Of a stretch of DNA of 64,000 bases, positions 7,910 to 60,577 are shown piece by piece. This DNA comes from Bigelowiella natans CCMP2755 (lineage: Eukaryota; Protista; Cercozoa), in the NCBI GenBank assembly GCA_000320545.1, contig ADNK01002959.1, positions 106,593 through 170,592 on the forward strand, written 5' to 3'. Within the stretch, counting starts at the first letter, position 1. The number at the start of each line of letters is the position of its first letter. Under the pieces are notes generated by a model. That model saw nothing but the letters and a program-made list of their open reading frames with translations. It was not told the origin of the DNA and did not search any database. The translations under genes were made by a program, and so were the position numbers.

Positions 7910-7992
7910 CTGTGATTTGTAGGAAACAAACAACACGGTGTTGTACACGCCGTTATCGACCTGTATCGTACCGTTAGATAAACATGACTAGA

Positions 7993-8049
7993 TGAGACAG
8001 ATCTAATGAATTAATCAAACCTTTTCAATGCTCATCCTAATGTAGCTGT
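7993..8049 (-). mobile_element. Short LINE 3'-tail copy (TA retained)
   Basis: Reverse complement acagctacattaggatgagcattgaaaagg...cattagatctgtctca matches the LINE terminus at 10050-10103. Confidence 0.8.
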
Positions 8050-8167
8050 AGAGCTATGCGTATCGTTCAACATGTAAATGTGCTCGTTGCATTGTTTGCA
8101 CGTCATTCGCTTGCTAGCTCTAGAGCATTATCATCTCCTAATGTAGCTGTGCAACAATATATGTGTA

Positions 8168-8230
<63 letters not shown>

Positions 8231-8274
8231 ATAATAAGTATCTTGGAAATAGACACAGGAATACCACAGCATAC

Positions 8275-8327
<53 letters not shown>

Positions 8328-8337
8328 GATGTATGTG

Positions 8338-8490
8338 TGAGACGGATGTGATGAAATGTTCAAATTTTTTCAATGGTCATACATATGTGTACACATATGC
8401 ATGTACATGTACATGCACATGTATGTGTATGAGATGATCCATGTCTTTCACGACCCCACAAGTGTTGCATGTGGCATCTGCCCATGTGTG
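8338..8490 (-). mobile_element. Inverted, internally deleted 3' fragment of the same LINE family
   Basis: 8338-8380 is the reverse complement of the LINE tail. 8431-8490 encodes (minus strand) [16 protein letters not shown], matching DATCDACGILKDMDHL in the LINE zinc knuckle. Confidence 0.8.
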
Positions 8491-8526
8491 CAGCGCACAT
8501 GCATGCATGTGCACACATGTGCACAT

Positions 8527-10103
8527 CGACGACTGGCTCAGAGATCGCACCGCCAGATTCAGATTTGGCAATGCTCTCTCTGAACACATGAATCTCAAGA
8601 GCGGCGTCCCCGAAGGATCATCTCTCAGCTGTTTCCTGTTCACAACCCATTGCGATGTTTGCGAACAAATTGACAACACAGATTTCCAAACATGCTGTGA
8701 CGACGTCACCCCCTGCAAATTGTTTTCGCCAAACCGATGGGGGAAAATGCAAGATGACATCCAGGCCGACCTGAACCAAATGACGGACTGGTGCATGAAA
8801 TGGCGGATGCGATTCAATGGGGACAAGAGTGGGCACCTCGTCATTGACAAAAGAAACAAAGCCTGCCGACACCAAACCTCCTGGAACATCTCTCTGAATC
8901 TCCAAGGCAAAATGAAAAGAGTCGACAGCGGCAGATGTCTCGGACTGATCTTCGACAACAAACTGACCTTTGAAAAACATGCTCTTGCTTCTCACCTGAG
9001 ATTGCAAAAGAAGCGAAGGTTTTTGTCAAGGTTGTGTTGTTCCAGACACCTTGTGCCGCTAAATGCCAGACTGAAATTTTGCAAATCATGGTTCCTTGCA
9101 TCCAGCAGACACGCAGCTCCAATGTGGAGATCACGAAGAAACATGCGAATGAAACAGATGGATTCCATGGAATCCCAAACCCTGAAACGTGCATTGGGAT
9201 CACCTGGATCCATCTCCAACGACGTTCCCCACGTCCTCACTGGCACGTTGCCACCCCGACATCAAACCAAAGTGCAATGTGCTGAATCATGGTTGCGCAC
9301 TGATGCATGGATCGACACAGGCAGCGGTCCTCAAATGCATGAGGGAACAAATGATTGCAGCAGTTGTGGCTTCATCATTGAAAATCGAAAAATGCCAGGT
9401 GGCACATCGTGGATTGATGTGTCCACAAACACGTGGAACAAGTGTCTTTGTTTCGTCGTCTCAAATCGATCACTGACGATTTGTTAGGTGACGAATTGCC
9501 CACAGTTTTGACGACAACAGAGGCGCTGAAAAAAGAATCAAAAAAACATCACAAGGTGATGAAATCCTGTGCTTTTGCCGAATTGCAGGAGGAATGGTCC
9601 AATGATTCATTGCGAGCTGTGCATCTCAAGAATCTTGGATTCCTTCCGTCATCTTCGATCACCGGCATCAAACTGAAACTTCCAAGTGTCGCTACATCAT
9701 GGATGCGCGCCATCTGTGGTGTCGGCAATCTTGGAAAATTCGTGTTCTCACGTGGACAATGCACAGAGACAGATGCCACGTGCGATGCATGTGGCATCCT
9801 GAAGGACATGGATCATCTCCTGCAATGTCCAACACACAGTCGAGAACAAATCAGATTGCGCAATCAAATGAGCGCAATCATGAATCGCAACGACGACACG
9901 AACCGGCTGACAAATGCTGAAAAGGACTCCAGAACTGCTGCGCGCAGTGCGCGGCAACATCGGTCGCATGAGGACGCTTTCAAATGCATGAAGCACGTGG
10001 TGGCAGAAACCAACAGATGCAACATTGGCGCTGCAGCCGCTGCATTGCACAGCCACATTGGGATGACCATTGAAAAAATTTGATTCTTCATTGCATCCGT
10101 CTC
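8527..10103 (+). mobile_element. 5'-truncated, frameshifted non-LTR retrotransposon (LINE): RT domain plus C-terminal CCHC knuckle; TpA-depleted
   Basis: RT motifs WLRDR, GVPEGSSLS (GVPQGS), CCDD (YADD position), WCMKWRMRFNGDKS, RCLGLIFDNKLTFEKH (KYLG..D.KL.F..H). Second frame 9433-10083 has CDACG...HLLQC. Ends ...catccgtctca. Confidence 0.92.
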
Positions 10104-10818
10104 ATGCATGCATGCATGGATGTTTCCTGTCTACAATTAGCATGATGGACTTTACTTCTCTCATGAACCGACCGACGCCGTAGCGTGCGTTCTACGTGGC
10201 GTTGCCTACGCCTAGACGCTGTTAGCACGACCGCACAGCTGCGTTCAACCTTGCTAGCTTTGCGTGGGCAACGTCTATGTGCATGTATGTAGCTAGCTAG
10301 AACGTACCACGTCGCCCTGTCGCCGGGCGCATTGAACAATTAAACGATAAAACGTAACTATGTAGGTAATAACGCTTGCGGCGCTGATCCCGATCTCATT
10401 GCGTACATTGTCAGGATCGAATCCTGCGCATCGCATGCATGCTCTGTCCTACCCTACTCACATCGCAATTGACAATGTGTGAACTGTGAGCAGGACTAGC
10501 ATCGCAATCGACAATAATGTGTGAACTGTGAGCAGGACTAGAGGAAGGAGTACAAGCGGTCTCAAATCGATCAGTGTACAAGTTAAGCATGTCAGCATGA
10601 CGCGGCTGCACGCTGCACAACTCCTACGTCATTCTGATGTGGCTTCTTCCTTACTGTAGCGACTGTTACTTCCTTTACATTTCAGGAGGCATATGGAGAC
10701 CATCCTGGCATGATCCATTCCTCCCTCATTGTTGCAACTCAGTCAAAAATGCATAAATTAAAGCAGCCATTCTACAGCCATCATTAGGTGCTCACATTGG
10801 GATTTTCTGTAATACAAT

Positions 10819-12166
10819 TTATACGAGGTGCGCTCCAACTGGATAACTGGAGGCACTCAGGATACCACAAATGCCACATACTGTTATTTCGGAAGGACCT
10901 CCCTTGCAGCCGAAACCGTCTTGAGGCGAGCTGTCGGTCTGACAAGATGCCTCTGCCTCGCGGAAGAGCTTAATGTAACCCTGCTCACCCCATGTAGTGC
11001 CCCAGGAGTTGCGCACAAGGTAGTAGTCGTCGCCATTCTCTGTACCATAGCCAACAAGCTGCACTGCGTGGTCAATATCACTTCCGCACTTACCCTTCAT
11101 CACACCACCACCATAAAGCTGCCAGCCAATAGTCCCAGCATCGACACTAATAGCCACAGGGCCAATGGTAGCGATCGCTTCCATGAGTGCAGTGTAGTTG
11201 TTAGTGGGGAGGTCAACTTGACCGGTCACATTTGCAACAGCCTTGATCTTGGAGGTATCACAGGTTCCAGTGCTTCCTTGATAAGGATAATCCTCCTCAG
11301 TCGTAATACCTGCTGATCCGATGTATTGGAAGGCGAGTGGCTGAGTAGAGCCTTGGCAACCGCCAGTGCCTCCACATTCCTCAGGATTTGGTGCGCAAGA
11401 CACAAGCTGCTGCTCGGAAAGGGTCATCAGTTTTCCCGTGGCAATGGCCAAGTGGGACTCCATCGTCTCGGATGAGGAAAATGCCCAACAAGCTAGCAGA
11501 AAAAGTAGAACATGTTAACACAAATCGAAGTACGTAATATATCCATACAATTATCTTTACTACAACGTATGGTGCGCTAATCTACTGAATTCTTACATCC
11601 ACATCCGCCCTGGTTCTTAACCGCGGTAACCACGCCCTTGTCCCTCCAGTCGACGCTGTCAGGCAGTGTAGCCAGAAACTCGTAATTCACAGGAGCAGCA
11701 CGAGCAACCTTGCTGTCTAAGCTCTGCAACTTAGGGTGGCTACGTTGATGGAACCCACGAGTGGAACGGCGAAACTCCTCGGGATGCAAATCAGTAAAGT
11801 CGTTAACCTATATTACAGTCAGAATCTTATCGTATCGCCTGAACGTGTATTATTCCTCATGATCTTCATGATGTACTTACGTGGAGGAAGTAAGAATGAT
11901 CCTCTTTATTGTGGCGGCGAATGATCTCCAAATGGCGTTCAAAGATGCCCTAAACAGATACGGCGGATTAGCACCTTTGAAACAAATTTCGCATTGTGGA
12001 GTAGAGGAACCTTGCGGTAGCCCATCTGTGACTCTGGATATGATTTTTTGAAGTCCACAAGATACTCATCGAAAGAGTAGGGATGTCCATTGGCAAGATC
12101 CTTATGGGAGACCCTGGGGCGTGCCTCAGCTTGGAAGCAGGAGAGGAGGAAGACAAGCGCGAACAT
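10819..12166 (-). CDS. Papain-family (C1A) cathepsin L-like cysteine protease, 4 exons
   Basis: Signal peptide; I29-like propeptide (VNDFTD); PDSVDWR; spliced QGGCG/SCWAF (catalytic Cys); LSEQQLVSC; DHAVQLVGYG (His); RNSWG (Asn); GEQGY. Confidence 0.95.
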
Positions 12167-12665
12167 GGGAGCTACTTCAGATATGAACTAAGATATATGA
12201 AGTTTTTGTGGTACAAATAATTCATTTCAAATTTCACTATTTGGTGTTATTTAGCCATATATTTGTGTTGTTTGCAGGATAATTACTATATTTCTCCTGT
12301 GAAATGTAAACACCAAAAACTCAATACTAAAATATTATGTCGTTTCCACATGAAGATGGTATCCGGAGAATCAATTAATGTGCAGAAATTACCATGTCGT
12401 ATAAGTAATTTCAAGTGCTTTTTTTGCAGATGCAACCCCAACTCCCTGCCTCTATTTTCCGCCAATTCGTCGAGAGTCTCGAGAGGCTCCCGTGTTTTTT
12501 AAGCATCTCGAGGGGTCTCCTGATTTTGGAATCTTGACGATCCTCGTACCCCTTGCCCCCCCTTTTCTTTGGACATTGGTTCTAGAGGTTGGCTCCTGGG
12601 TGTGTGATTCTAGAGAAGGCTTACCGATACAAAATATATCTATACTATCTAGCGCTTTTGCCATA

Positions 12666-14590
12666 ATGGGAAGAGATGGATTAAGTGATGTAAACAAGGA
12701 AGCGAAGGAAGCATCGAAGGCAACGATGTTGAAGCACGTAGAGGCCAAAGCTACTTCGAAAAACCCTCCAAAAATGACTAGGACGGCAACGCTTCCTGCT
12801 TCAAGTTCATCTTACCAAGATGACAGTAATAAAAGCAGCAACAACAGCCAGCAGCAGCAACAACAGCAGCAACAGCATAACAAGCGACTGAGACCCTTCT
12901 CTAGGCCATCTAATCGAAACACACGGCTCAGGCCATCTTTATCGTTTCCTTCTTCGCGTAAAACTAGAAGAATAACGCCAAGAGGAAAGAAAGGGAGAAA
13001 TCAAGATTTGGTATCTGCAGAAGACCTGGGGAAGGCAGACGGAAATAGAAGTGGGGACAACGATGACGACGATGAGAGCGAGATGATCCGTCAATTCGAG
13101 AGAAATATTGTTGCAAAGGTGCTAGTTGTGACATTCTTTTTTGTGTCAGTTCAACATAATTGATTTCAAATCTCATTTACTCTACTATTACAGGAATCAA
13201 GCTGAAATTGTCCTTCATTTTTCTTCTCTCTTCTGATTTATTATCTATTTTACTACTACTTCCTTTTAGGAGGCTAAATCTTCCACCAGTGCAGATTATA
13301 TCAGTAGTTCCGCCTACTCAAGCGAACCTACTAATCCCACTGCTACTGCTAGTGATAATACTAGTGGTTTCAATCACGACGACAAGGTCGTCGGTCCCAA
13401 TGATCAAGAGGGCAGCAACAAAGCGGACTACGGCGAGAGAAAAGAGCAGGTAGTGGTGAAAGTAGTAGTAGTACAAGGGAATCATGGTAATGTTTTTCGT
13501 CATTCTCTGACGTAATATAATAATTATGTTAGATAGAAGGGGATACGTTCGATGGTAACCAGCGGAACAAGATACAACCAGAAGTCAATTGTGTCTTTGC
13601 TTTTTTACATCTGGTAGATAATCTCCCAATGTAGTAGTAGTAGTAGTAGTAGTAGTAGCTAAAAAGGATTGCAGCACTGATAGAATTGAAATGGTGCTCA
13701 CACAAGCACATCTGTCTTTTCGCATTTTTTATTTCAATAAGGGGCAATACTAATACTAAGTATCACTTACACAATGACGCGCTCTTTTATCTTCTATTTC
13801 TCAAAATTGTGATTTAGTAGAGCCATCATCATTTCAGGCTGACCATACATACATACATACATACATACATAATACAACGAACCTCCCTTACAACTATTAC
13901 TACTCCTACTCCTCCTCCTCCTCCTCCTCCTACTACTACTACTACTACTACTACTACAGCGTACAAAGCTGGACTTAGTCCGCATTGTTACTCATGTGAG
14001 AGGCGCTGAGTACAACCCAAAGGTGAGTGGTGTGTTTGGGATCTGATGATCACGAATAATATTATCTTCTTCGTGTTAGAATACTATCTACAAAACATTG
14101 TAAAGTTTTTCTCCATGTGATGAATTACTACAAGCAAATATAATCCAAATTAAAACACAACATTGGTAAGCATCTTGATCACCTGTGTCACTCCTAACAT
14201 GACACTTTAATTATTTCATTACTTTATTATTATTCTATTTGATTGCAACTTCAACTAAGTTAGTAATCATGAACTACAAATATGAAACCATGTTGATCAC
14301 TTTTATTTAACAATAGAGATTTCGTGCCGTCGTAATTCGCCTCCTTAAACCAAAAGCCACTGGCATGATGTAAAAACTAACCAATACTAATTTGTATATC
14401 ATAAGTGATAAGGAGGCCATTTTCTCTCGCCGTTTTTTGAATCATTGTAGCCCGAACTACTTCAAACACATCCAAGCACAAATGGCGCATACAGACACAC
14501 ACACACACACACACACATAATCTGTCGCAATTCCGATAGATATGCCTCTGGAAAGTTGGTGTGCATGGGCGCAAAGAATGAAAAGTAATA

Positions 14591-14626
<36 letters not shown>

Positions 14627-15601
14627 ATATATCTATTTTTCATGAGCCACTTGTTTGGAACTCATGCTTTCTCTGCCTTTTCAGAGCTGCTCATTTCGCG
14701 TGCAAAAAGTTCGTAAGAATACTGCAGAAGGTATTAGCAGGATCATTATTTTTATCATTCAATTTATCGAGGTCGTACCTTCAAAATATATCATCATACA
14801 GTGACTATCATCCGTTTTAGCGATTTTGCTGTATCCAGAGGGCAGACAGAGAGGAACTCTGAATGTAGAGAATAATATATCAATTTCACAGGGATATATT
14901 ATGCTGTTTTTAGGTTGGATATCCCCAAGTAAGATTCGCTCCTTCCCATGAAGAACCATTGATACGGAGCATAATGGCCAAATGCAAGGTTCGTAATAAA
15001 TTAGGTGTTGATACTGTTTAGTGTTCCTTTTCTTGCTCATGATGATGATGGTGATGATGATGATGATGAAGATGATAGTGCTTCTATAACTTTCGTCATT
15101 CACGGGTAATTCGATTACACGTAATAAAATGGTTTTCTTAGGTTGATTTTCCAGTTCGTCTAGAGGACTTAGCTACCACGCACAATGTGAGCATTGCAGT
15201 ATTTCCTACTAATAAAGACTCAACTTTAGACGTTCGTAACGATCTATTTGATCAGGAATTTGTCAGTTTCGAGCCAGAAATATTCCCTGGTCTGATATAT
15301 CGAATGACTGTTCCCAGGTAAGAAGTCGTCATGATGGAGAAGATAGCGGCGTTTTTAATTAAGTTTCGTTGTTTTAGGGTCACAATTTTCGTATTTGTAA
15401 CCGGAACCGTGCTATTAGTCGGAGCCAAAACTCGATCTGAGGTGTCGAAAGTTACGTCCTCGCATGATGTTGATGGCGTACAATCAATATTTAGTGCGTC
15501 AAGTAAATCTTCTTTTTTGTGTTCAGATTCATCGTGCTTTCGACCTACTTTACCCAGTTCTGCTTCAATTTAGGAAAGTTGTTGACGCTGAATTACAATA
15601 G
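12666..15601 (+). CDS. TBP: Divergent TATA-binding-protein-like factor with long low-complexity poly-Q N-terminus; many short exons
   Basis: Spliced core: IQPEVNCVFAF / KLDLVRIVTHVRGAEYNPK / RFRAVVIRLLKPKATGM / IYASGKLVCMGAK / AAHFACKKFVRILQK / VDFPVRLEDL / FEPEIFPGLIYRM / VFVTGTVLLVGAK / AFDLLYPVLLQFRK, stop at 15601. Confidence 0.88.
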
Positions 15602-16449
15602 ATCGAATGTACAAACGACATGAGATTTATCTTAATTTAATGCTGCAGCGAGTGATTCGCAGGATAGCGTAGTCAATGTGGTATTTTCTAATAAACAGCT
15701 GGCTCAGTACATCACACCAAAATTATGAGCATGTTCAGCACTATTGCACAACCTATACCAGTATAAGTATATCTTGCTTTGTCGCTAAGAATTTTTGGAG
15801 TTGTTATAACTACACGATCGAAGCTATGCGCTTCCCGAAGTCCTCCACGCTAGGATGCATCGCATGTATAGTAACCAAGCTACATACGCATAGCTATGTA
15901 CGCATATGGCATGCGCCTTGTATATGAGCTAGATGAGCTTTGATGCATGACGTGCAAGATGAAAACGCGTAAAGCTCTAGACTAGTAAAGCTGTGAAGAG
16001 CTTAGAATTCAATGTCTTAAGCAAGCACCCGGTATCATTAGCTAGTTAGTGCATGCCGGCGCAGCCGTCCGTAGCCATGGCGTTGCGAGGTCGGAGCAAG
16101 CTAGTTAGCTATAGAGAGTGGTGCGTCGCAACAACTAGACAATGATGATCTAGACAACTGAGAGCCATGCCGCCTCTCGCTATAGGGACATATATGTCCA
16201 TATACGTGTAGCCGTCTACGACATGTGTACATCACGTACTTCACATGTACCTATAGCTACACATGTGCCAGATGATAGCGCTCACATGTACAGGTACATG
16301 TGTAGTGGCTTGTTTGGTGCATGTGTGGATATGAACAGAGCATGTGTGTGTGCTTTTTAGTACATGTGGTGTGCATGGGTACATGTGTTCCTTACGCGTA
16401 CACGTATAGGGACATATATGTCCATATATCGCCCATGCCCGTCGCATAG

Positions 16450-16696
16450 AATGCGGCGAACTTGCTGCTTAATTGCCAAAAGGCTTGCTAGCTTGGAGCA
16501 ATTGAAATAGATCATGCAAAATGCATACCATGCGGCTCTGCTAGGTTCTGTGCCCATGTCCGAGCATTGCACAATAGGCACACTGTATATACTGTGAAAC
16601 AAACCAGTACAATTTAAGCGCTGTAGCCGCAGCTTTGCACAGCTACATTAGGATGACAATTGAACAAATTTAACTTATTCGTTACATCCGTCTCAT
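16450..16696 (+). mobile_element. LINE 3' fragment, less mutated copy (5' boundary approximate)
   Basis: 16596-16696 translates ETNQYNLSAVAAALHSYIRMTIEQI*, versus ETNRCNIGAAAAALHSHIGMTIEKI* in the 8.5-10.1 kb LINE. Same catccgtctca terminus. Confidence 0.85.
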
Positions 16697-16779
16697 ATAC
16701 TGTGCCTATAGTCTGCTAATTGCTTGAAAGGAAAGAAGGCGCAATCAATTTAACGATGTTGCACATGTGCAGGAAAACT

Positions 16780-20662: not shown

Positions 20663-20965
20663 TGTAAATGATCAGAGAGCTTCTTCGATTCTGGACTACG
20701 GAAGAAGCGAAACCAAAAAAATACCTGTTCCCGCGAAAAAATGGAGCATGCGGGATATAGATATATTTGACGCAGATGCGAAATAGCCTTTATTTTAGTT
20801 CTGCATAGTATTAACGCACTCTTAAATCTGATGTACGAGTACTCGTAGATCTATGCTTATTACTGTTTTAGGAGTTGTCGTAAGGTAGTTTTGGTCTTAA
20901 TAAATCTTCTATGTTGATACTACTGTTACTTTTTTTACGAATCTAGATAAATAATATCAGCAACG

Positions 20966-22261
20966 ATGGATTGCTCCGGAATGGCACGATGGGCCTCACT
21001 TGGCCTGACTATTATCACGCTCATCTTCCTTTTTCCAGCCTTTGCAGGTCTGAAAGTAGTAGTAGTAGTAGTAGTAGCAGTAGTAGTTGTAGCACCTACC
21101 AGCACTACTATACTACTACTACTACTACTATATTACTTGTTTTGATATGAATGAAGGTGTGAATGGGGATGTCGCTTACACGGCTTCAAATCTCGAGACC
21201 AATGGCTGCACCATTTTTCGTAATTATGGCTTGCTCTCGTACAAGGTTTAGTAGTGGTGGTGGTGGTGGTGGTGATGGTGAGAGATGTCTATGTGCAATC
21301 TATTACTGCTCTTATGATTTCGCTTTATTCACCGATAGCCTGAATGAAATGTGGTTTTCCCCCCTCGTGTTAGCAATGGGATTCCTGTCAGAAGGGGACG
21401 TACACGATTACTGATTATGACTCCGATGTGTAAGTGAATAAGTGAACAGCACAATCAACTTAAAGAAGGTGAGATAATGATGATGATGATGATGATGATG
21501 ATACTCGTTATTCAGCTGTAACAATGGTAATGGGAAGCTGTGCGGCAAGTGCAATGGTGCTGGGAAAGGCGTCCTTTCGTAAGATGATGATGATATTTCG
21601 TCTCACTTTCCGTTTTACCCATCAGAGGAAATACAACTTTGTTGGAAATTTCATTTGGTGTACTGTTCTGGTGTTGCGAGTGCAGATGTGTTCTATGTAG
21701 ATCGAGTTTGAGTAACATTGCTGCTTTTTTCCAGATTGTCATAATTTCTTTTGATTTATTGGTATTTCTTGCTTTTCAAGCTATTTAGTTTCATTGTTTC
21801 CTTTTGTGGTAGTTTCCTGGTGTTTGCTCTCTTTGGTGTCGTTGCTGCCTTTGGAATCATGGTAGCCTCCTCTAATTCACCTGGCCTGAAGTGTAGCGAT
21901 AGTATGTCTTCAAGCCGTTCTGAATAACCTTCCTCCTGATTTAAAGCAACAACATCATCCCTGATTCATGACCATCTACATCTCCCTTATTAATATGTTA
22001 TCTCTACTGCCACGATGTTGTTCTTCATAGTGTCCATCGTCTTAACAGTAGATGTCGTAGGAAACATGATGATGTGTCACATATTGCACTTGCATAAAGT
22101 CAAAGTAGGAAATATGATGATGCCTACGTAATTGTATCAGTAACAAATTCCCTTTTCGACTCACAGATAATGAATCAACAACGTAGGTTGGAAAATTGTA
22201 TGGGGCTAATCTCTCTCCATTCATCCCAGCTGGGGTACTAGTAGTAGGAGTTGTAGTAGTG

Positions 22262-22300
<39 letters not shown>

Positions 22301-22945
22301 ATAGTTCTGTAAATGATACGGTAGAAGATGAAGGAGCAAAAGCGCCTACTTGGCGTATATGCACATCCGCAACATTCCTTTTTTCTCCATCATATACATA
22401 TATCTTACTATCCTCTATATTATTCCTCTTTCTGTTTCTGCCCAAGCTTCTTTCTCTGTTACTTTTGATTTTATTTGAAGATATTAAGCAAGATCTTTCG
22501 AAGAGAAAGACAATATTCACGTTCTGTTTAAATAATATTGTTTTACTTCTCATGTAAACGCAGCTGCTCTTCGGAGTGAGCTTCTGCATGTTCATAATGT
22601 GGACCGTATGGGCAGGAGGCTGCGACCACTTCGTCAAGGTTGCAATTGTGAAAACATTGTAGTCGTAATCGTTGTCTTTGGTTTTCGCTGGTGACTAAGA
22701 GATTGTTGATAATGTTGTTGCATGTGTATACTTTCTACATTGTATCGATGGATTATACCTTCAAGTAGAGATTACATCTTCTCTTTAAATCATACAAAAT
22801 TATTTATCTCAGGATAAATATCATGGACATTTCATCATCGATCTAGGACCAGGTAGATATGCATATATTTTTGTGCTGCTTCTAAGCATAGGTGGTACCA
22901 GTGTGATACACATACTATTCTCCAAAATCTGTTATGTTAATATGT

Positions 22946-23010
<65 letters not shown>

Positions 23011-23304
23011 TGTGTGTGTATGCAATGCAGCGTGGGCGTTGGCTTTCCTGGCGTTCATCTTCACCCTCACATCTGGGATTATCGAGTTCATGGTTGGCTT
23101 CGGAGTTCTCAGCGATGGTCGCACTATAAATAAAAAGACGAGTAAATGAAATGAGAACATGGCACTCTGTTGTTTAAGATTGTTCAAGATGGACTTGATT
23201 CTAAATTTTCCTATCCATGCATATCAATAGTTAAACAATCTATTACTGTTTTAGGCCGAGGAATGAACTATCAAGCTGCTGAAGACAACCAGCCAAATGC
23301 CTAG
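20966..23304 (+). CDS. Claudin/amastin-like small multi-pass membrane protein, multi-exon
   Basis: MDCSGMARWASLGLTIITLIFLFPAFA (TM); loop with NYGLLSY, QWDSC and LCGKC; further TM exons LLFGVSFCMFIMWTVWAGGC and AWALAFLAFIFTLTSGII; last exon MNYQAAEDNQPNA*. Confidence 0.6.
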
Positions 23305-23832
23305 TCATATGCACAAAATGCATTTCAATCATTGGAGAGATGTGATAGACGTCGACCTCATGACTATTGCCAGGCGTGCATCTAGATACATGCTGTCCCC
23401 TGCCTTGGTCAACCGGATCTTGATGTTTCTAATTTTTTTAGTTTCTATTGATAAACTCTGGATTTGAATCGGTGCATTTTGCCTCAAAACATCAGGAAAT
23501 TTGTTTGTTCTTGAGAAACAAAATGCTGACCCACCTTGCTAACTGTCATCGCACATCATTGCACTCATGGCACAAGATGATTCGCGCCCATGCAGTCACA
23601 TGTTACCACTTTGTGTGATGTTGTGCGTGTCGGTGAGTTCGACGTTGTTCATCAACCGGCGTGCATGATGCACTGAGCCACATGCATGGCAGCATCAGGA
23701 TCCTGTTGCGCATGCATCATGGCCCACGTTGCATTGGCCACGACGCTGGCTAGGCGGGGCGCCTTGCAGTGACGCAATGTGCACAGCGTGGCCCGCCACC
23801 ATCTGCACTGCGATGCAACACCCCCCCAGCTA

Positions 23833-25910
23833 GCCAGCACCGCTGGACCGTCGCAGCCCGTCCAGTCGTTGTTGGTCTCGGAAAAATCGAAAAAACTGTG
23901 ATTTCAGCTTCGGAAAGAAATTCTCGAGACGTGCACGTGCAAAGCTCGAATTTTTGCCCATTGAGCATTGGAATTGGTCTTCCGGATCTCAGACCCATCG
24001 AGGCCAAACCCGGTCACAAATGGGTTTCGCATGTTTGCAGAGCGCTTCAAGGGCATTTTTTGCGTGCAATCCGTCCGCAACCGTCAAAAAACACTTTCTG
24101 AATCGGCGCAATGTCGAAAAAATTCAAAAATTCAAAACCTCAGCTCAAAAACCTCGATTTTTGACCCCTCACTGCACATGGCGCTGCGATGCATGGCGCC
24201 ACGATGCAGCTGCGTCCGCTCAAGTGCGACAAGACACACAAGGCGTGCCAACGGAGCTGCACGTGCGAGCACGCGTGTCGGACGCGCCAGCACGACACTC
24301 CACGTGGGACGACACGGCACAATGAAAAAATCTCCGCGCAGAAGTTTCTCAGAAAGTTCGCACGTGGCGACATGACAAAAGTGAAAAGCTGACAGCTTTT
24401 CACTCAAGTCGCAATTGCAACAATTCAGACACATCTCGACAGAACTCAAAAGTCCAAGTGACACATTGAGATCAGAACTCAACTGCACAAGCAAGTGACC
24501 AAGCACACTCAGAACTCAAACGACCAAGTGACATCAGAACTCAAACGTTCAAGTGACAAAGTGACTCAAGAACCAAGCAACAATGCAACTCGACGACTCG
24601 TGCGACTTCAGTTCTCAACACGAGACCACATTGCACCACGCCCAACGCTGCAACAATCGACAGCTGCACCCGATGCAGAACGAATCGGTTGCATGCGAGG
24701 GCGCACGTTGCTGCAACAATCGACAGCTGCACGTGATGCAGAACGAATCGGTTGCATGCAACAGTCCGTGTGCGTCTCAACTTCAACCCTGCGACACGCG
24801 TGCTTCTGCACACGTGCGCAACACCTCAGGTCCACCACCGCGGCACGCTGACCGATCAGCGTCACCCATTCCGAATCACGCAGCTTGCCTTGACGAAGAG
24901 TTCAAGGACAACAGCCCGGCTGCGGCCGTTCTGCACGCGAATGGTTTCAATGCCGCGTCGCATCATCGCACCGCGCCTGCTGCCATGCAGGCTGAGCAAG
25001 TTCAGACAATCAACAAGGACGTTGACAGCGTGCTGACTCCCACGCAAGCGATGAGTGCACAAACCGAAGGCGCGATGTCACGACGTGCATTGCGGAGAAA
25101 GTTCTCATGATTTTGGTCAGAGGTGCAGCCGACGCGCGTGTGCAATGCGAGCAAGTGAGGACGTGTCCGTTTGCAATGGCACAATGGAACTGGCTTCGTG
25201 GACAGCCGGAAGCGCAATGCTCTGTGTGTCAAAGTTGATCGAGATGTGACGGTTGAAACTTTGAAATTGGGGCATCACTGCCACGTTCAGACGTGCACGC
25301 ACAGCCACGACAGGACACACACGACGTGTCGTGAGTGCAGAGGGGTTTTGACGCATTGGAGACACTGCGCAGCTGGTTTTCGGTCAAAGAGATTGGTCGT
25401 GTGCAAACGCGCGCGCAGAACTTTGGTTCAAAACGCCGAGGCGTGGCGCGCACAAGCGGCGCGTGGTGCGGGGCAGCGCGATCGAGCAGAAGTCGCACCT
25501 CGCGGGGGGGGGGGGGGAATGCGAATGAAAAACATTCAACTGTGCCAAAAGTTTCCACAGGACCCCTGCTTGACATCTGAATCGAGTTTGCGCGAAAAAA
25601 ATGCGTCATTTTTTTTTTTTTCAATTTTCGCAAAGTTGTGACCGGTTTGGCCTGGATGTGGACTGCATTGTCTTGTGCACAAACTTCTTTTCAATTTTTG
25701 GGGTCTTGAAATTTGCTGTGGTTTCACTGTGCACGAGACACCCGCATCTGTGTTCGGACATTGGGAACACGGGGAGCCAGGCAGGCTGGCAGGGTTCCAT
25801 CCGAAAGATCGATTCCAAATGACGGGCAAAATTTCGAACTTTGGTGAGTCTCAAGGCTTTCCACCTAGCTAGCTTTGGTCATTTGAAAATCGAGATTTTT
25901 CGAGTTTTTG
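23833..25910. mobile_element. TpA-free repeat element with long imperfect inverted ends; probably a non-autonomous DNA transposon
   Basis: Left caaagctcgaatttttgccc..ggaattggtcttccggat..aggccaaacccggtcacaa matches reverse complements at ~25637-25840. Interior recurs at ~50 kb. No recognisable transposase. Confidence 0.65.
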
Positions 25911-26298
25911 GGTGCCCACGTTGATTTTTGTGCAGTTTGTCAAAAATGAAAACATGCAGGGCATCGCAGTGCTGTGTGCACATCAGCACGCACATCTGAG
26001 CTTTCGAACTGACATGCGCGAGCGTGCAGACTGCTGTTGCCGGAGGTCAACACGTCACCACCACCGCGTGCAGGCAGCAAAGTTTTCACAACCGCGCCAC
26101 GCGATCTAAACAATGATATTTATGGAAGCATGTCATCGCTAAATCTTCACAACGTAATCACTTTCATAATTTGTTTTAAAATCATTTAACACACAAATAA
26201 AAACTACATCCGACTCATATCTCGGTACACCTGTCCCAAGAAACTGTACTGAGCATTTTTGTAAACTATACAACTACGTTTTGAGCATATGTACACAG

Positions 26299-27819
26299 TT
26301 ATATTGATTCAACTGTACTCCGGCTTCCAAAAAGAGCTTTACGAATTGAAGTGAGGAAGTTCCATTTGTGCTGCTCCTTAGTTGGAGTTGCCAACGAGAC
26401 ACCACCAAATTTTCCATGCTGATCTCTTTTTGCTTTCTGAGTTCGAATAGGTAGAGCCTCAGCAACGAGAGACTTCACAGCCTCATAGATAAACTCGAGT
26501 GTCAAAGTTGGACGATCGCCATTACCTCTCGATGCAGCAGCAAGAACTGTCGATGAAGTCATCGCCTTAGAATCTAGTCCATTAAGCACGTCGAGGACAT
26601 TCTTAAGACGACCATCATACCTCTTTAAAACCCCCCCACTTAATACTCGTCCTGTAGTATCAGGAACATGAGAAAATCGTTGCAATGTTGTCCATGCATA
26701 GTCTATCAGGGCTTCATAAGCATCATCCTCTGAAGTCGTATTATGGGCACTTTTAAGGGTTTCAATAGGGAATTCTTTTAAGATAATGTAACATCTAGCA
26801 ACCAGCCAAGCCCAAATTATTCTCTGCGTCTCTGCATCGGCTTGAGCATAGTCGAGAAGTTTGAATGATCCAGGAAGATCCATATTTTCGAAAGACATTC
26901 CATGCTCTTCAGAAAATCTTAATAGAGTGAGAAATGCTAAGGTGGTGTGTGTTCCATTGACGAGAAGAATTTTCCTTCGAGCATAGTATTCCGCCTGATC
27001 AGTGGTGCTGGTAGTAACGATTGTGGATCCTCCGAAAGGGAGAATATGCATCACAGTATTAGATTCTTCCGATTCAAAATCTGAAGTAAATGTTTCGGCG
27101 TCGGAGGCGAGATGAGAATCCCTCCGACTGTCGCTCTCTTCCGATTCTGTTGTCGTCTCGATAGTAGACGCGCGATCTATCCTTGTAATGGGAGCTTCAA
27201 CCTCTCCTTTCCCCAACAAAGGCGGGAGGACTACAATTTGGCCCTTCCATGGCTCTGCCTTGATTTCTATGTTTCCATCGGGGTTAATGATACGCTGAGA
27301 ACATATTCTATCTACCATGCAAGGAAGTACTGTGACACGGCCATCGAGCTCACGAGCCAGATCTTCAACAGCGGTGTGATCATTCTCGCAAGCATACAAT
27401 TTAGGGGGATTGCTTTGCTTCGGTAAGCGCCCAAGAATTACTTTAATCCCATCAAGACCTTTGTCTAAACTGCATGAAAATGATGTTGCCCGGCGTACAA
27501 CTTCAAGCAAGGCTTTGCCGGTGCTCGCAATGAAGAACGGACCTTGCCCTGCTTTCGCCTTCCCAACATCTTTTCCGTGCAGGAAGTGCATATCTCTCCC
27601 TATGGTTTTGCCATTTACTTTTACCCTGATTCTCTTCACATCGTGTTTCATTAGTTCCTGCCAAGACGAAGACGGGCGCTGTACGATTGCATAGTCTATG
27701 CAATTCGAAGCTTCGATTGCCTCCAAGAGCAATCCAAGTCCCAGTTTTCCAGCTCCGAAGTGGAGATGGAACGAATGGAGATGTGGTGTAGACGATGTAG
27801 AAACTTCACAACGCGGCAT
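26299..27819 (-). CDS. Mannitol-1-phosphate 5-dehydrogenase-like (MtlD family), single exon, 506 aa
   Basis: LHFGAGKLGLG (HFGAGNIGRG Rossmann motif), YACEND, CMVDRIC, RKILLVNGTH (catalytic Lys/Asn region). Confidence 0.8.
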   Translation of the reverse strand: MPRCEVSTSSTPHLHSFHLHFGAGKLGLGLLLEAIEASNCIDYAIVQRPSSSWQELMKHDVKRIRVKVNGKTIGRDMHFLHGKDVGKAKAGQGPFFIASTGKALLEVVRRATSFSCSLDKGLDGIKVILGRLPKQSNPPKLYACENDHTAVEDLARELDGRVTVLPCMVDRICSQRIINPDGNIEIKAEPWKGQIVVLPPLLGKGEVEAPITRIDRASTIETTTESEESDSRRDSHLASDAETFTSDFESEESNTVMHILPFGGSTIVTTSTTDQAEYYARRKILLVNGTHTTLAFLTLLRFSEEHGMSFENMDLPGSFKLLDYAQADAETQRIIWAWLVARCYIILKEFPIETLKSAHNTTSEDDAYEALIDYAWTTLQRFSHVPDTTGRVLSGGVLKRYDGRLKNVLDVLNGLDSKAMTSSTVLAAASRGNGDRPTLTLEFIYEAVKSLVAEALPIRTQKAKRDQHGKFGGVSLATPTKEQHKWNFLTSIRKALFGSRSTVESI

Positions 27820-28363
27820 CAGTGTGGCTTAGATTCGATTTCTCTCAAAAGGTGATGCGGGCGTTTGGTTTTTGGTCGGAAATCTTTCCCTCGGTTTTCT
27901 TTGAGCGGAGTGTGACCCAAGATTTGTGCGAAAAGCAATATAATTTATTACATTTCTTAAGAGAGACAAGTAAAATTTATTGACTCAGGGAAAGAATTCC
28001 ATTGTGATTTATTTTCGGAGAGAAGGATAATTCAGAAAACTATCACGTGAGAAGATTTGTGAATTCCTGCACGTGACTCGTTCAAAAAGTTTTTTAGATA
28101 AAATTCCAGGAATTACCGAATCGTAGTTTTTCGAGAACGATGACAGAACGACCGACGACCGAAACGCAAAAAGTTTTTTTAGATAAAATTACCGAATTGA
28201 TTCCACTTTTTCGAGAAGATGACCGAACTTTGCACCCCCGATAGTCTCCAGAGTTTTGTTGTCGCTATGAAGTTGGAAGTCGAAACCCGGCAGTCGAAAC
28301 CCGGTTAATGCCGGGTATCAATGACGATGAGTCCATTTTTCATACAGGGTAAGGGTAACACAC
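27820..28363. promoter_or_regulatory. Putative bidirectional promoter between divergent genes
   Basis: 544-bp gap containing aaaagttttttagataaaatt twice (~28085 and ~28169, the second with a longer T run), gtcgaaacccgg twice and two CACGTG sites. Function inferred from position only. Confidence 0.3.
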
Positions 28364-29525
28364 ATGGCTGCTACAAGCACATCATCATTAAGCAGCTTGG
28401 TGTTGCTTTGCCTCTCGGCTTCCTTACCGACACATGTCTCCGCAAGGGTTGTTGCATTTACAGGTGGAAAATATGAGGGTTGGGAAACATGGAATTGGAA
28501 CACGATCACAGATCTTGGGTTCTGGACTGCCCCAAACGACGAGATTAGATCTCTAGCAAAGCAAAACAATGTGCGACTCTTCCAAACCGCGCATCTTCCT
28601 GATCGTAAGGAGTGGCTGGATTCCGATAAACGCGCTGCCTTTGCTGCCGAAAAAGCACAGCATGTGGTAAACAGTTCCCTGGATGGTTTGTTCTTCGACT
28701 TTGAAGGGACGGGGCTTGGGAGTAAGGAGAAAGAGGCCTACACGAAGCTCGCCGAGGCAGTTTCGGATGCCCTGCGACCACTGAACGCGAGTATTTTTGT
28801 CTGTGTGGGTGCCAGTCCTTCATATGAATTCAGAAATTATGACTACGCCGGCCTCGCCAATACCTCCGATTTTCTTTTTATCATGGGCTATGACGCTCAT
28901 TTTTGGGACGACTACACATGTGTCACCAAAGGTACGTGCTCTCCCGCTGAAGCTCCGATGAAGGATATTTTAAAGGGAGTAGAAGGCTATGTCAAGGACG
29001 TCAAGAAGGAGAAGCTAGTGCTCGGTTTACCGTGGTACGGACAACGTTATACCGAGGTTCTGCTACCATTCAATCAAGGGCAGATCGATTACAAGGATGT
29101 TCTGGAGAACGTTGTTAACATTACTGGTCGAGTAAAGAAAAGGGAGATGGATAAGACGGCAAAATCCTGGGTATTACATTGCCATGGGGCTTGTATGGAT
29201 GGCAAGAAAGGAGAAGTAATCTGGTACGACGATGCTGAGACCCTGAAGCCTAAATATCAAATCGCGAAGGACCATGGCCTGTTAGGAGTAGGAATGTGGT
29301 ACTTCTACAAGCCCCTACTCATCGCCACTACTAGTTTCCTTTTTTCGATTCTTTCATAACATTTGTAGTCACCACCATTCATATTTCATCGCTGATCGAT
29401 AATTCCTTCTGTGTACGTCAATGTACAGGGCTGTTGACAAGCTTCCGATCCCAAATGGTAGCGATGATCCTTTCAAATCAGAAAGAGAGGCCATGTGGAA
29501 TGCCATAACTAACTGGAACAAGTAG
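28364..29525 (+). CDS. GH18 glycoside hydrolase, di-N-acetylchitobiase-like, one 3' intron
   Basis: Signal peptide; LDGLFFDFEG (DxxxxDxE); FIMGYD; KLVLGLPWYG; IWYDD; GVGMW spliced to AVDKL...AMWNAITNWNK* at 29525. Confidence 0.9.
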
Positions 29526-30099
29526 GTGGGGGCCGAAGAGCCTGGTTTTATGCACTTGGACAATCACATCGCACACTTGATGTAAATATGTCGGTGTACT
29601 CACTTCAGAAATTTCTCTCCCCCCCTCTCTCTCTTTCTCAGAGAGAGACTGCGCATGTGTCGTATTCAATGAAGGCATGTCAAAGTTTGCCATTGTGTTT
29701 CACAGCTATGAAATACAAATGATATCAGCGATGTATGGGCACAATGCTAGGATGATGAAATGAAACTGATGATTTGCTACCAGTCTGGCAAAGGCTCTGC
29801 TCTGCTGCAATGATGTGTTGTGCTGCGATCAATCATCAGATTGCAATGCGAGAATGGGGGCAATGAAGTGTTTTCACAGTTATTACCTCAAGAGGCTAGC
29901 TACATGCACAGAATCATCATCGCCATCCGGCTGGTAGTTCTAGAGCTAGCTAGGCACGCATGTGAAGCTGAATCTGTCAAAAGCAGCCATGTTCACAATG
30001 CAGCAGCCACAAACACTAGAACATGGCAATGATGAGGAATGTCTAGATGCAAACATTGTGTGCAACAAGACAGCCGAGTATAAGTGAGGCGGCAGCTAC

Positions 30100-30767
30100 G
30101 ACGCTCTGCGCTGCATCCACAATGATTGTGTGCCATCAAAGCAGCAACCACAAAGGCTGCTGTATCGTAGTCGCTGCATTGCACAGCTACATTGGGATGG
30201 CCATCATCAAATTTGATTGATTGATTGCATCCATCTCACAGACCAAGTGCGCGTGAAGGCAAGATTGCATGCCGCTGCATTCACCACGGTGTGGAAGGAA
30301 CATCATGCCATCAAAAACTACTTTGACACACTGTTGAAAATAGGACCGCCAAACGGGTGTGCGTGTGTAGCTACAGGATGCCGGTCCTGACTGTCATGCT
30401 GTTTCTCCTTACCATCCAGACAATCTTGGCACGGTGGTCCTCATGGTGGAAAGCAAGTCTAGAAGTCGTGCACCGTGCAGCTGCTTAGGCGCAACAACAT
30501 GATCACAGAAGTGCTGCGGTGAAATAAACAGCATTTTCTGACTGACACTTCCGCCACACCAGTTAACCGGGTGGAAAACGTGCACGATGCTACGTGGACA
30601 TGCACATTGCTGTTCTGATTCATATCACATGTACATGCAGAGGGTAGCAACCGAAGTTTCTGGTCGATGAGTTCATTTAAAGACAACTGCACTTTCAATT
30701 ACGATATTGAACAGCTACATCAGGATGACCATTGAAAAGATTTAATCAACTCATTACATCCGTCTCA
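30100..30767 (+). mobile_element. Two decayed LINE 3' remnants (tails at 30183-30238 and 30711-30767)
   Basis: acagctacattgggatggcc...catccatctca and acagctacatcaggatgaccattgaaaag...catccgtctca. Confidence 0.75.
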
Positions 30768-49768: not shown

Positions 49769-49964
49769 GGATTAGCTTAGAGTACGTACAGTGTAACAGT
49801 GACCGCGTTATGTGCACGCAGGCTGGTAGACATATTTTTACTAACATGACGGTCCTGTCACATTGGGCAATTATTGCAAGTCACGATGCACTACTAGACA
49901 CACGCACAGCACAACACAGACATTGCATTCATGTATGCTACTCTAGTACTGCTGGTCGCGCGTG

Positions 49965-60559: not shown

Positions 60560-60577
60560 TTAGGGTTAGGGTTAGGG
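60560..60577 (+). repeat. Interstitial telomeric repeat (TTAGGG)3
   Basis: gagggTTAGGGTTAGGGTTAGGGggg. Confidence 0.85.

What the first reader, a model, noticed from the sequence alone, without database searches (positions are those of the whole stretch)
7993..30767. Six LINE-tail paralogues show TA, TG and CA at the same sites, fixing the direction of change
SEEN: site cat[TA]ggatg is TA at 16649 and 8038 (minus copy), TG at 10059 and 30193, CA at 30721. Site t[TA]catccgtctca is TA at 16683 and 30755, TG at 10092, CA in the minus copy (8349-8350). Comparing 16596-16660 with 10005-10070: tac->tgc, gta->gca, tac->cac, ttagg->ttggg. No copy has CG at these sites. INFERENCE: TA is ancestral and each copy mutated independently after insertion. 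Short copies keep most TAs while the 1.6-kb copy is saturated, which suggests a length dependence like the RIP size threshold.
Basis: partly seen in the sequence, partly recalled or inferred. Interest (0 to 1): 0.8.

Follow-up and report, generated by a model that had tools for sequence, protein, structure and literature searches.

The report
LINE tails record known TpA hypermutation
The six retrotransposon tails differ at TA/TG/CA sites because this alga, almost certainly Bigelowiella natans, turns TA into TG or CA in silenced mobile DNA; a 2026 preprint already showed this process experimentally, and what is added here is evidence that long copies are hit far more often than short ones.

Summary
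All stated bases are present, and among 100 tails listed in contig order neither site ever reads CG.

TA is ancestral. Five near-identical copies with an intact reverse-transcriptase frame keep 43 TA sites. Older long copies, including the window's 1.6-kb copy, have changed 79-93% of those sites to TG or CA, about 1:1. The choice is randomly interleaved along a copy and mostly discordant between copies. All 10 Tyr codons in the window copy now read His or Cys.

Independent change after insertion is only partly right. CA at site 1 is inherited across subfamily S1 and probably in copy D, and F's CA at site 2 matches a multi-copy haplotype.

Length dependence holds as a graded correlation. In a genome-wide census of 100 of 111 S1 tails, tail TA sites are lost at 65% on copies of at least about 1 kb, against 15% on copies under about 465 bp. 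Non-TA divergence is similar in both classes. No sharp RIP-like threshold is seen.

The genome is Bigelowiella natans, judged from Bigna1 gene-model hits. The process is already published (bioRxiv 10.64898/2026.01.13.699255), and this scan has found it before on other DNA of this genome.

The parts
8525..10105 (+). Copy A: 5'-truncated APE-type LINE copy of subfamily S1, covering the C-terminal half of the reverse transcriptase through the 3' tail. It is hypermutated: 40 of 43 ancestral TA sites are changed.
   Evidence: States at the 43 sites: 22 TG, 15 CA, 1 CG, 2 other, 3 TA. Non-TA divergence is 4.8%. All 10 Tyr codons now read His (4) or Cys (6).
8431..8488 (-). Short inverted piece of the same LINE at the 5' junction of copy A. 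It looks like a twin-priming 5' inversion and is also TA-free.
   Evidence: window 8488-8431 matches query positions 1323-1380 on the opposite strand at 79% identity; the TA-free tract starts at 8429.
8429..10132 (.). TA-erased island coinciding with copy A. From 10132 to about 10280 only CTA/TAG-context TAs survive, so the erasure probably leaks about 150 bp into the 3' flank.
   Evidence: TA observed/expected is 0.04, TG+CA 1.68 and CG 0.80.
10056..10104 (+). Tail of copy A holding site 1 (TG, 10059-60), the middle site (tttGatt) and site 2 (TG, 10092-93). The ORF stop is at 10081-83.
   Evidence: This haplotype is private within S1: TG at site 1 occurs in 1 of about 31 S1 tails.
10105..10120 (+). 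3' microsatellite tail of copy A (tgcatgcatgcatgg). It is read as a (TA)n tail converted into a TG/CA mosaic.
   Evidence: unmutated S1 copies end in tatatata..., and hypermutated ones in tg/ca mosaics.
16597..16696 (+). Copy B: LINE tail of about 100 bp from subfamily S2. TA is kept at both sites and at the other tail TA sites.
   Evidence: It aligns with the S2 copies L040, L044 and L050, which have variable 5' truncation points.
30160..30240 (+). Copy C: short tail fragment of about 80 bp with TG at site 1, TG at site 2 and tttGattGattGatt. It lies inside a partly erased island of about 750 bp (29751-30500).
   Evidence: In the island 18 of 24 surviving TAs are CTA/TAG, and TG+CA observed/expected is 1.6-1.9.
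30706..30767 (+). Copy D: short tail of about 62 bp from subfamily S3, with CA at site 1 and TA at site 2. It matches multi-copy S3 haplotypes, so its CA is probably inherited.
   Evidence: The copies at C737 and C1391 show the same CA, TA, TA states at these sites.
7993..8060 (-). Copy E: degenerate short tail with TA at site 1 (8038-39). Its 3' arm reads ttagatctgtctca.
8338..8389 (-). Copy F: short S2 tail with CA at site 2 (8349-50) and tttGaac. It abuts a (TA)n array. The same haplotype occurs in at least 4 other genomic copies.
   Evidence: The other copies are at C676, C687, C1238 and C3581.
8165..8330 (.). Intact (TA)n arrays between copies E/F and the erased island. They are not mutated although they lie only 100-250 bp from the island edge. 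The stretch 8380-8428 is a TA/TG/CA transition zone.
23605..26116 (.). Second erased island inside the finding's range. It consists of two nested non-LINE repeats: an element of about 0.9 kb inserted in one of about 0.76 kb.
   Evidence: There are 5 TAs in 2.5 kb, and no Pfam domain was found. Three copies of the 0.9-kb element have 0 TA and share nearly all TG/CA states, with only 2-3 discordant doublets.

Best explanation
The six sequences are 3' ends of 5'-truncated copies of an APE-type LINE (reverse transcriptase plus an endonuclease/exonuclease/phosphatase-type endonuclease) in the nuclear genome of the chlorarachniophyte Bigelowiella natans. Several LINE subfamilies (S1 to S4) share the conserved tail of about 60 bp. 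The tail ends in catccgtctca followed by a (TA)n-type microsatellite.

The TA/TG/CA trimorphism is the footprint of the host's TpA-specific hypermutation. In targeted blocks of DNA, the A (or equivalently the T) of a TpA is converted on one strand or the other, giving TpG or CpA. TpA is its own complement, so one hit destroys the target on both strands. That is why CpG almost never appears and why each site ends as TG or CA.

Shown here:
- TA is the ancestral state.
- The process is specific to TpA.
- It hits both strands at random along a copy.
- It acts on resident DNA after insertion and after duplication, including non-LINE flank.
- It reaches near-saturation in discrete islands.
- Mutated states are sometimes passed on to daughter copies.
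- Tails on long copies are erased much more often than the same tails on short copies.

Inferred:
- The chemistry is adenine deamination by an ADAT2-like enzyme. This is the preprint's hypothesis.
- Targeting works by nucleation on long silent mobile or foreign DNA with limited spreading, so short isolated tails usually escape.
For: Family and host:
- copy L033 has an open frame of at least 695 aa with the YCDD box.
- relatives carry PF00078 plus PF14529. Two hits are JGI Bigna1 gene models, at 93% and 54% identity.
- the genome is 91.4 Mb. implies about 94.5 Mb.

Direction:
- five copies differ by 0-1 substitutions per 1.5 kb and keep 42-43 of 43 TA sites.
- Seven older copies have changed 79-93% of those sites to TG or CA (for example 22:15, 15:23, 21:13), with 0-1 CG each. 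Their non-TA divergence is 2.5-9%.
- Tyr>His/Cys at 10 of 10 codons in the window copy. Other frequent changes are Ile>Met/Thr/Val and Leu>Ser.
- TG/CA concordance between mutated copies is mostly 0.47-0.75. A single TG or CA ancestor cannot produce that.
- 0 CG in 200 site observations.

Specificity:
- A>G by 5' neighbour, strands pooled: TA 39/86 (the ceiling is 43/86), AA 5/252, CA 12/258, GA 2/215.
- Runs tests give z from -1.4 to +1.1, so there are no strand runs.

Action on resident DNA after insertion:
- L006 and L027 share 2.1 kb at 97.3% identity, including about 480 bp and about 580 bp of non-LINE flank.
- 27 of their 35 differing sites are TA-versus-TG/CA or TG-versus-CA, and 20 of those lie in the flank.

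Islands:
-.

Length:
- Searches give a census of 100 of 111 S1 tails. Length is set by markers at about -465 and about -984 bp. The young H2 lineage is excluded.
- Tail sites changed: 17/114 (short), 5/14 (medium), 13/20 (long). Fisher p = 9e-6 for short against long.
- Copies changed at both sites: 1/57 against 4/9, p = 8e-4.
- Non-TA divergence in the last 150 bp is about 1% in both classes.
- The locus sample agrees: 1/19 against 6/13 copies with at least 2 private tail changes, p = 0.01.

Experimental basis:
- In the mutation-accumulation lines, 230 of 231 de novo mutations in the two integrated viral regions are A>G or T>C, all of them at TpA.
Against: - The base calls therefore rest on the assembly.
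- The organism is inferred from Bigna1 hits and from earlier notes of this scan, not from a marker gene.
- The ancestral state was defined from a young lineage, and it carries inherited TG/CA itself in its 3' 650 bp.
- The census sees only two TA sites per tail.
- The census needs an exact 31-base core.
- Some single-change haplotypes may be inherited lineages rather than post-insertion hits: (TA,CA) has 12 copies and (TA,TG) has 6.
- I tallied the census by hand from the listings.
- Age control rests on only 135 bp per copy.
- L018 (at least 1.6 kb, body erased) keeps all six tail TAs and its (TA)n.
- The preprint's main target is single-copy, so repeat length as such cannot be the trigger.
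Confidence: 0.9

Rival explanations
1. CpG decay. The ancestral dinucleotide was CG. Methyl-cytosine deamination gave TG or CA, and a second hit gave TA.
For: TG, CA and TA at one site is the classical CpG-decay series. A few CG-versus-TG/CA differences exist between the duplicates L006 and L027 (5 of 35 sites).
Against: - No CG in 200 site observations.
- Flanking CpGs are conserved in nearly all aligned tails.
- CpG observed/expected is 0.8-1.1 inside the erased islands.
- The intact, near-identical copies carry TA at all 43 sites.
- Tyr codons become His/Cys, not the reverse.
Confidence: 0.01
2. Classical RIP-like C>T mutation. TG or CA is ancestral, and TA is the product of C-to-T changes at CpA/TpG in repeats.
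For: It is repeat-associated and dinucleotide-specific, and the same three dinucleotides are involved. The literature on fungal RIP is large.
Against: - Mutated copies disagree (TG versus CA) at a quarter to a half of sites. They cannot be the unmutated ancestors of one TA state.
- The TA-bearing copies are the ones with an intact ORF and near-zero divergence.
- Erased islands are GC-richer, at 0.48-0.56 against about 0.38.
- De novo mutations go from TA to TG/CA.
Confidence: 0.02
3. Editing during retrotransposition. An ADAR- or APOBEC-like enzyme edits the LINE RNA or cDNA, so the mutated tract equals the inserted segment and nothing happens afterwards.
For: In the window the TA-free tract (8429-10132) matches the inserted LINE. 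It starts within 2 bp of the twin-primed inverted piece at the 5' end, and ends 27 bp past the tail at the 3' end.
Against: - TG and CA are interleaved at random, so both strands were hit many times.
- The duplicates L006 and L027 diverged at TA sites after duplication, mostly in non-LINE flank.
- Non-LINE repeats are erased as well.
- In L018 the erasure stops before the tail.
- The published de novo events occur in resident integrated DNA during vegetative growth.
Confidence: 0.04
4. Pure lineage inheritance. For the two cited sites, the differences among the six tails are all inherited from different master elements and none arose after insertion.
For: - States follow subfamily. S1 is CA at site 1 in about 90% of copies.
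- H2 (TG,CA) has 26 copies.
- F's and D's haplotypes recur in other copies.
- The erased 0.9-kb element copies share nearly all their states.
Against: - Copy A's states (TG at site 1, TG, TG) are private within S1 and sit in a copy with 93% of its TA sites changed.
- Copy C lies in an erased island.
- The master lineages themselves differ by the same TA>TG/CA changes, so the underlying process is the same.
Confidence: 0.1
5. Sequencing or assembly artefact, for example systematic miscalls at a modified TpA.
Against: - Strand-specific miscalls should give TA and CG outcomes as often as TG and CA. CG is about 1%.
- States are shared between duplicates and across lineages.
- Illumina mutation-accumulation data show the process independently.
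Confidence: 0.01

Closest known systems
TpA>TpG/CpA hypermutation of integrated foreign DNA in Bigelowiella natans (Mettrop et al., bioRxiv 10.64898/2026.01.13.699255, 2026)
   Same: Same organism and same TpA-only A:T>G:C signature on either strand. It shows the same regional clustering, with TpA depletion and CpA+TpG enrichment. The preprint already lists reverse-transcriptase, endonuclease-RT and DDE domains as enriched among TpA-depleted CDS.
   Different: The preprint follows one giant-virus (NCLDV) insert and one virophage insert, plus 1-kb window and CDS statistics. It has no copy-by-copy TE analysis, no sequence context beyond TpA, no analysis of inheritance of mutated states and no length analysis. 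Added here:
- site-resolved saturation of LINE copies
- random strand choice along a copy
- divergence of segmental duplicates after duplication
- relative survival of CTA/TAG sites
- a correlation between copy length and erasure
Repeat-induced point mutation (RIP) of Neurospora and other fungi
   Same: A dinucleotide-specific transition hypermutation that inactivates mobile DNA. It produces islands of skewed composition and can leak into flanks. Here there is also a dependence on copy length.
   Different: The direction and chemistry are opposite: C>T at CpA creates TpA in RIP, whereas here TpA is destroyed. The process here acts in vegetative lines and on a single-copy 186-kb insert. The length effect is graded, with no threshold, and a homology requirement is not shown.
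APOBEC3 / ADAR editing of retroelements in animals
   Same: Deaminase-type clustered transitions in retroelement sequence. ADAR prefers a 5' U.
   Different: Those enzymes act on RNA or cDNA intermediates and leave strand-asymmetric clusters with only mild neighbour preference. Here both strands of resident DNA are hit, with 10- to 45-fold TpA specificity and near-saturation.
CpG depletion by 5-methylcytosine deamination
   Same: A self-complementary dinucleotide is lost to TG/CA on either strand.
   Different: The lost dinucleotide is TpA, not CpG. CpG is at normal levels in the islands.

Membership tests
B. natans TpA hypermutation (Mettrop et al. 2026) | Substitutions confined to TpA dinucleotides | tested here: met
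   79-93% of TA sites are changed, against 2.5-9% of other sites. A>G is 39/86 at TA, against 1-5% at AA, CA and GA.
B. natans TpA hypermutation (Mettrop et al. 2026) | Products are TpG and CpA (A>G or T>C on either strand), giving a GC-ward bias | tested here: met
   TG:CA is about 1:1 and CG is 0-1 per copy. Island GC is 0.48-0.56 against about 0.38 in the background.
B. natans TpA hypermutation (Mettrop et al. 2026) | [quoted passage not shown] | tested here: met
   four islands of 1-2.5 kb in the window, with TA observed/expected 0.02-0.05 and TG+CA 1.5-1.7.
B. natans TpA hypermutation (Mettrop et al. 2026) | [quoted passage not shown] | tested here: met
   the LINE ORF hits eukprot jgi/Bigna1 models 76607 (93% identity) and 77403 (54%). 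No marker gene was checked.
B. natans TpA hypermutation (Mettrop et al. 2026) | De novo occurrence during vegetative propagation, in only some lines | not testable with these tools
   This needs mutation-accumulation or population reads.
Fungal RIP | C:G>T:A transitions, mainly CpA>TpA | tested here: not met
   The direction is the reverse.
Fungal RIP | Triggered by sequence duplication above a length threshold | tested here: inconclusive
   Length correlates with erasure: 15%, 36% and 65% of tail sites for copies under 465 bp, 465-984 bp and at least 984 bp. The effect is graded. Erased patches of 150-460 bp exist, and the preprint reports a single-copy target.
CpG methylation decay | Ancestral CpG at the variable sites, with CpG depletion in the affected DNA | tested here: not met
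   0 CG in 200 observations. CpG observed/expected is 0.8-1.1 in the islands.
RNA/cDNA editing of retroelements (ADAR, APOBEC3) | Strand-asymmetric clusters limited to the retrotransposed segment and fixed at insertion | tested here: not met
   random TG/CA interleaving; divergence after duplication, including non-LINE flank; non-LINE repeats are erased.
APE-type non-LTR retrotransposon (LINE) | RT domain with a YxDD box, an APE endonuclease in full-length relatives, variable 5' truncation and a conserved 3' end | tested here: met
   - open frame of at least 695 aa with YCDD.
- P0001 (1158 aa) carries PF00078 plus PF14529.
- variable 5' ends.
- shared tail.
- In the erased window copy RVT_1 scores only 15.3 bits.

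The most novel reading that the evidence does not exclude
The hypermutation machinery is not aimed simply at 'foreign' sequence. Its probability of acting scales with the length of the contiguous mobile-element block. The same two tail TpA sites are changed at 65% on S1 copies of at least about 1 kb, 36% on copies of 465-984 bp and 15% on copies under 465 bp, at equal non-TA divergence. Short tails are erased only in or beside islands. This would point to a step that nucleates on long silent DNA and then spreads (through chromatin or small RNA). The published work has not described any such targeting rule.
Probability: 0.5. Interest if true: 0.55.

Novelty: already known. Interest (0 to 1): 0.38.

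Why it matters
A TpA-specific, GC-ward hypermutation of resident DNA is one of the few RIP-like genome defences known outside fungi. Its enzyme and its targeting rule are both unknown.

This locus adds no new system. It does give clean, site-resolved natural data:
- TA is the substrate.
- Either strand is hit at random.
- One hit immunises the site.
- The process continues after insertion and duplication.
- Erased elements can still be copied.

The correlation with length, and the relative survival of CTA/TAG sites, are concrete and testable clues to how targets are chosen and what the enzyme prefers. They could be checked at once against the published mutation-accumulation data.

Tried and rejected
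I did not try to obtain long stretches another way. Later genome searches were run with loci=0 and short patterns only.
I replaced it with a 35-place pattern.
- My first gap setting (N{18,34}) missed subfamily S1. It was corrected.
- The look-up of encoding contigs for the GH18 ORF found nothing on record.
- Pfam found nothing in ten ORFs of the other three erased islands.
- Literature searches using RIP, TpA and A-to-G terms did not surface the preprint.
- My first matched-site length test used only five young-lineage TA sites and was not significant (p = 0.08). It was replaced by the six-site and census tests.
- A stem between GGATG and CATCC flanking the two sites was considered by eye. It does not extend and shows no covariation, so it was not pursued.
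- An explanation of TA survival by context alone was rejected. The same CtaCA context is mutated at alignment column 245 but kept at columns 1266 and 1635.

Full report
**Observation**

The window holds six copies of a LINE 3' tail of about 60 bp, plus a seventh degenerate one, at the stated places. All cited bases are correct.

Copy A (8525-10105) is the end of a 1.6-kb 5'-truncated LINE. Its ORF stops at 10083, so site 1 is coding: ATT GGG in A, against ATC AGG in most relatives. A short inverted LINE piece (8431-8488) sits at its 5' junction.

The tail is very abundant. The 14-mer GGATGACCATTGAA occurs 813 times in the 91.4-Mb genome and 0 times in the control.

**The wider signal**

The window contains sharp blocks almost free of TA:
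- 8429-10132, with 3 TAs
- 23832-26107
- 49948-50975
- 59621-60561

In these blocks CpG is normal and TG+CA is at 1.5-1.7 times expectation. The first block coincides with copy A.

**Direction of change**

I aligned 25 S1 copies from loci fetched around tail matches.

Five copies (L023, L025, L026, L032, L033) differ by 0-1 substitutions per 1.5 kb. They keep 42-43 of 43 TA sites and an open frame. L033 reads through at least 695 aa, including the YCDD box.

Copy A, L018, L019, L020, L004 and the pair L006/L027 have changed 79-93% of those sites. TG and CA appear in roughly equal numbers, with 0-1 CG per copy. Other sites differ by 2.5-9%.

In copy A all 10 Tyr codons read His or Cys.

The mutated copies disagree with each other on TG versus CA. 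Concordance is mostly 0.47-0.75. Within a copy the choice shows no runs, with z between -1.4 and +1.1.

One TG or CA ancestor cannot give this pattern, and a CG ancestor is excluded. In 100 tails listed in contig order, with both dinucleotides left free:
- site 1: TA 46, CA 44, TG 9, CC 1, CG 0
- site 2: TA 69, CA 21, TG 10, CG 0

The process is specific for A preceded by T. Pooled over strands, A>G is 39/86 at TA (the ceiling is 43/86), against 1-5% at AA, CA and GA.

**Where and when it acts**

L006 and L027 are segmental duplicates. They share 2.1 kb at 97.3% identity: the LINE copy plus about 480 bp and about 580 bp of non-LINE flank.

Of their 35 differing sites, 27 are TA against TG/CA, or TG against CA. 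Twenty of those lie in the flank. So the process works on resident DNA after insertion and after duplication, and it is not confined to the LINE.

The 2.5-kb island at 23.6-26.1 kb is made of two nested non-LINE repeats. Three copies of its 0.9-kb element have no TA at all and share almost every TG/CA state, with only 2-3 discordant doublets. In that family the erased state was inherited.

Inheritance is also seen in the LINE:
- CA at site 1 is fixed in S1.
- The young lineage H2 carries TG (middle site) and CA (site 2) in 26 copies.
- The haplotypes of copies D and F recur elsewhere.

'Independent change after insertion' is therefore true for the bodies of old long copies and for copy A's tail. 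It is not true for several of the cited states.

**What it is**

The LINE ORF hits JGI Bigna1 gene models at 93% and 54% identity. A 1158-aa relative carries RT plus an APE-type endonuclease. The genome is therefore Bigelowiella natans or something extremely close to it.

In mutation-accumulation lines of B. natans:
- 230 of 231 de novo mutations in an integrated giant-virus (NCLDV) region and a virophage region are A>G or T>C, all of them at TpA.
- TpA-depleted CDS are enriched for RT, endonuclease-RT and DDE domains.
- An ADAT2-like deaminase is proposed as the enzyme.

The finding is therefore an instance of a published process. This scan has met it several times on other DNA of this genome. 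The preprint contains no analysis of wider sequence context, of LINE copies or of length.

**Length dependence**

The six copies alone cannot test this. They belong to different subfamilies, and the short copies contain only the tail. The tail's remaining TAs are few and mostly in CTA/TAG contexts.

I first compared six tail TA sites in the fetched S1 copies. Private changes were 4/114 in 19 copies under 700 bp, against 21/48 in 8 old copies of at least 800 bp. Copies with two or more private changes were 1/19 against 6/13 (p = 0.01).

I then made a genome-wide census without fetching sequence:
- A 35-place pattern lists 100 of the 111 S1 tails with their middle-site and site-2 states.
- Two invariant TA-free markers at about -465 bp (46 hits) and about -984 bp (30 hits) give a length class when cross-matched by contig and position.
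- The young H2 lineage was left out.

| Length class | Tail sites changed |
|---|---|
| Under 465 bp | 17/114 (15%) |
| 465-984 bp | 5/14 (36%) |
| At least 984 bp | 13/20 (65%) |

Short against long gives p = 9e-6. Copies changed at both sites are 1/57 against 4/9, with the duplicate pair collapsed (p = 8e-4).

Non-TA divergence from the H1 state (the ancestral S1 tail haplotype, TA at both sites) in the last 150 bp is about 1% in both classes. Age does not obviously explain the difference.

Limits of the census:
- I tallied it by hand.
- It covers two sites per copy.
- It needs an exact core match.
- Some single-change haplotypes may be inherited lineages.

The effect is graded, not a threshold:
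- L018 is at least 1.6 kb with an erased body, yet keeps all six tail TAs and its (TA)n.
- Copy C (about 80 bp) and L003 (about 150 bp) are mutated because they lie in or beside islands.
- Erased patches of 150-460 bp exist.
- The young long copies are untouched, so time is needed as well as length.

**Mechanism**

Shown:
- The substrate is TpA in duplex resident DNA.
- Either strand can be hit.
- One hit removes the target on both strands, which explains the absence of CG.
- Hits accumulate over many rounds until an island is saturated.
- Island edges are sharp on a scale of tens to about 150 bp. At the 5' edge there is intact (TA)n at 8165-8330, a mosaic at 8380-8428 and erased sequence from 8429. 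On the 3' side only CTA/TAG TAs survive out to about 10280.

Inferred:
- The chemistry is adenine deamination. T-directed chemistry would give the same products.
- Targeting nucleates on long silent mobile DNA and spreads only a short way.

**Verdict**

The independence claim is partly right. The length idea is supported as a correlation but not as a RIP-like threshold. The underlying system is already known.

Majority states were used only inside scripts, to count changes in a partial algal LINE.

Noticed in passing
window 8429-10280; family alignment: TAs that survive in erased DNA are mostly in CTA or TAG context. In the four large window islands, 21 of 26 surviving TAs are CTA/TAG, against 40% window-wide. 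In the bodies of hypermutated S1 copies, CTA sites survive at 5/44, against 3/161 for other contexts. This suggests a slower rate when C lies 5' of the T or G lies 3' of the A. The preprint does not analyse context.
   Followed up: partly
window 23605-26116 and 49948-50983; L034:2012-2935: A non-LINE element of about 0.9 kb, nested in another repeat, is completely TA-free in all three copies examined. The copies share nearly all TG/CA states, so either the element was copied after erasure or it is natively TA-free. Its ORFs have no Pfam domain.
   Followed up: partly
L006:1021-3121 vs L027:1019-3104: Five of the 35 differences between the two segmental duplicates are CG against TG/CA. These could be ordinary CpG decay, or rare second hits (TG>CG or CA>CG) by the same process.
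   Followed up: no
window 7990-8430; 3' flanks of loci: LINE tails cluster in and next to (TA)n arrays, and many copies end in tatatata. This suggests either insertion into (TA)n targets or a (TA)n 3' tail. In erased copies this microsatellite is a TG/CA mosaic.
   Followed up: partly
window 8130-8160 (minus strand): A seventh, degenerate tail fragment reads ttgcacagctacattagga... on the minus strand, with TA at site 1 (8139-40).
   Followed up: no
genome-wide census: The young H2 lineage is mostly long: 14 long, 4 medium and 8 short copies. The other S1 tails are mostly short: 10 long, 7 medium and 57 short. The cause could be a different degree of 5' truncation, or long older copies dropping out of the census as they decay.
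   Followed up: no
window 28364-29359 (+) and 62744-63823 (-): There is a single-exon GH18 ORF resembling animal di-N-acetylchitobiase, and an ORF with a weak GPS (GPCR proteolysis site) motif. These at first suggested an animal-like host.
   Followed up: partly
P0003 (jgi/Bigna1/76607): A JGI gene model fuses a kinesin motor domain with sequence 93% identical to this LINE's ORF. This is probably a chimeric gene prediction across a LINE insertion.
   Followed up: no
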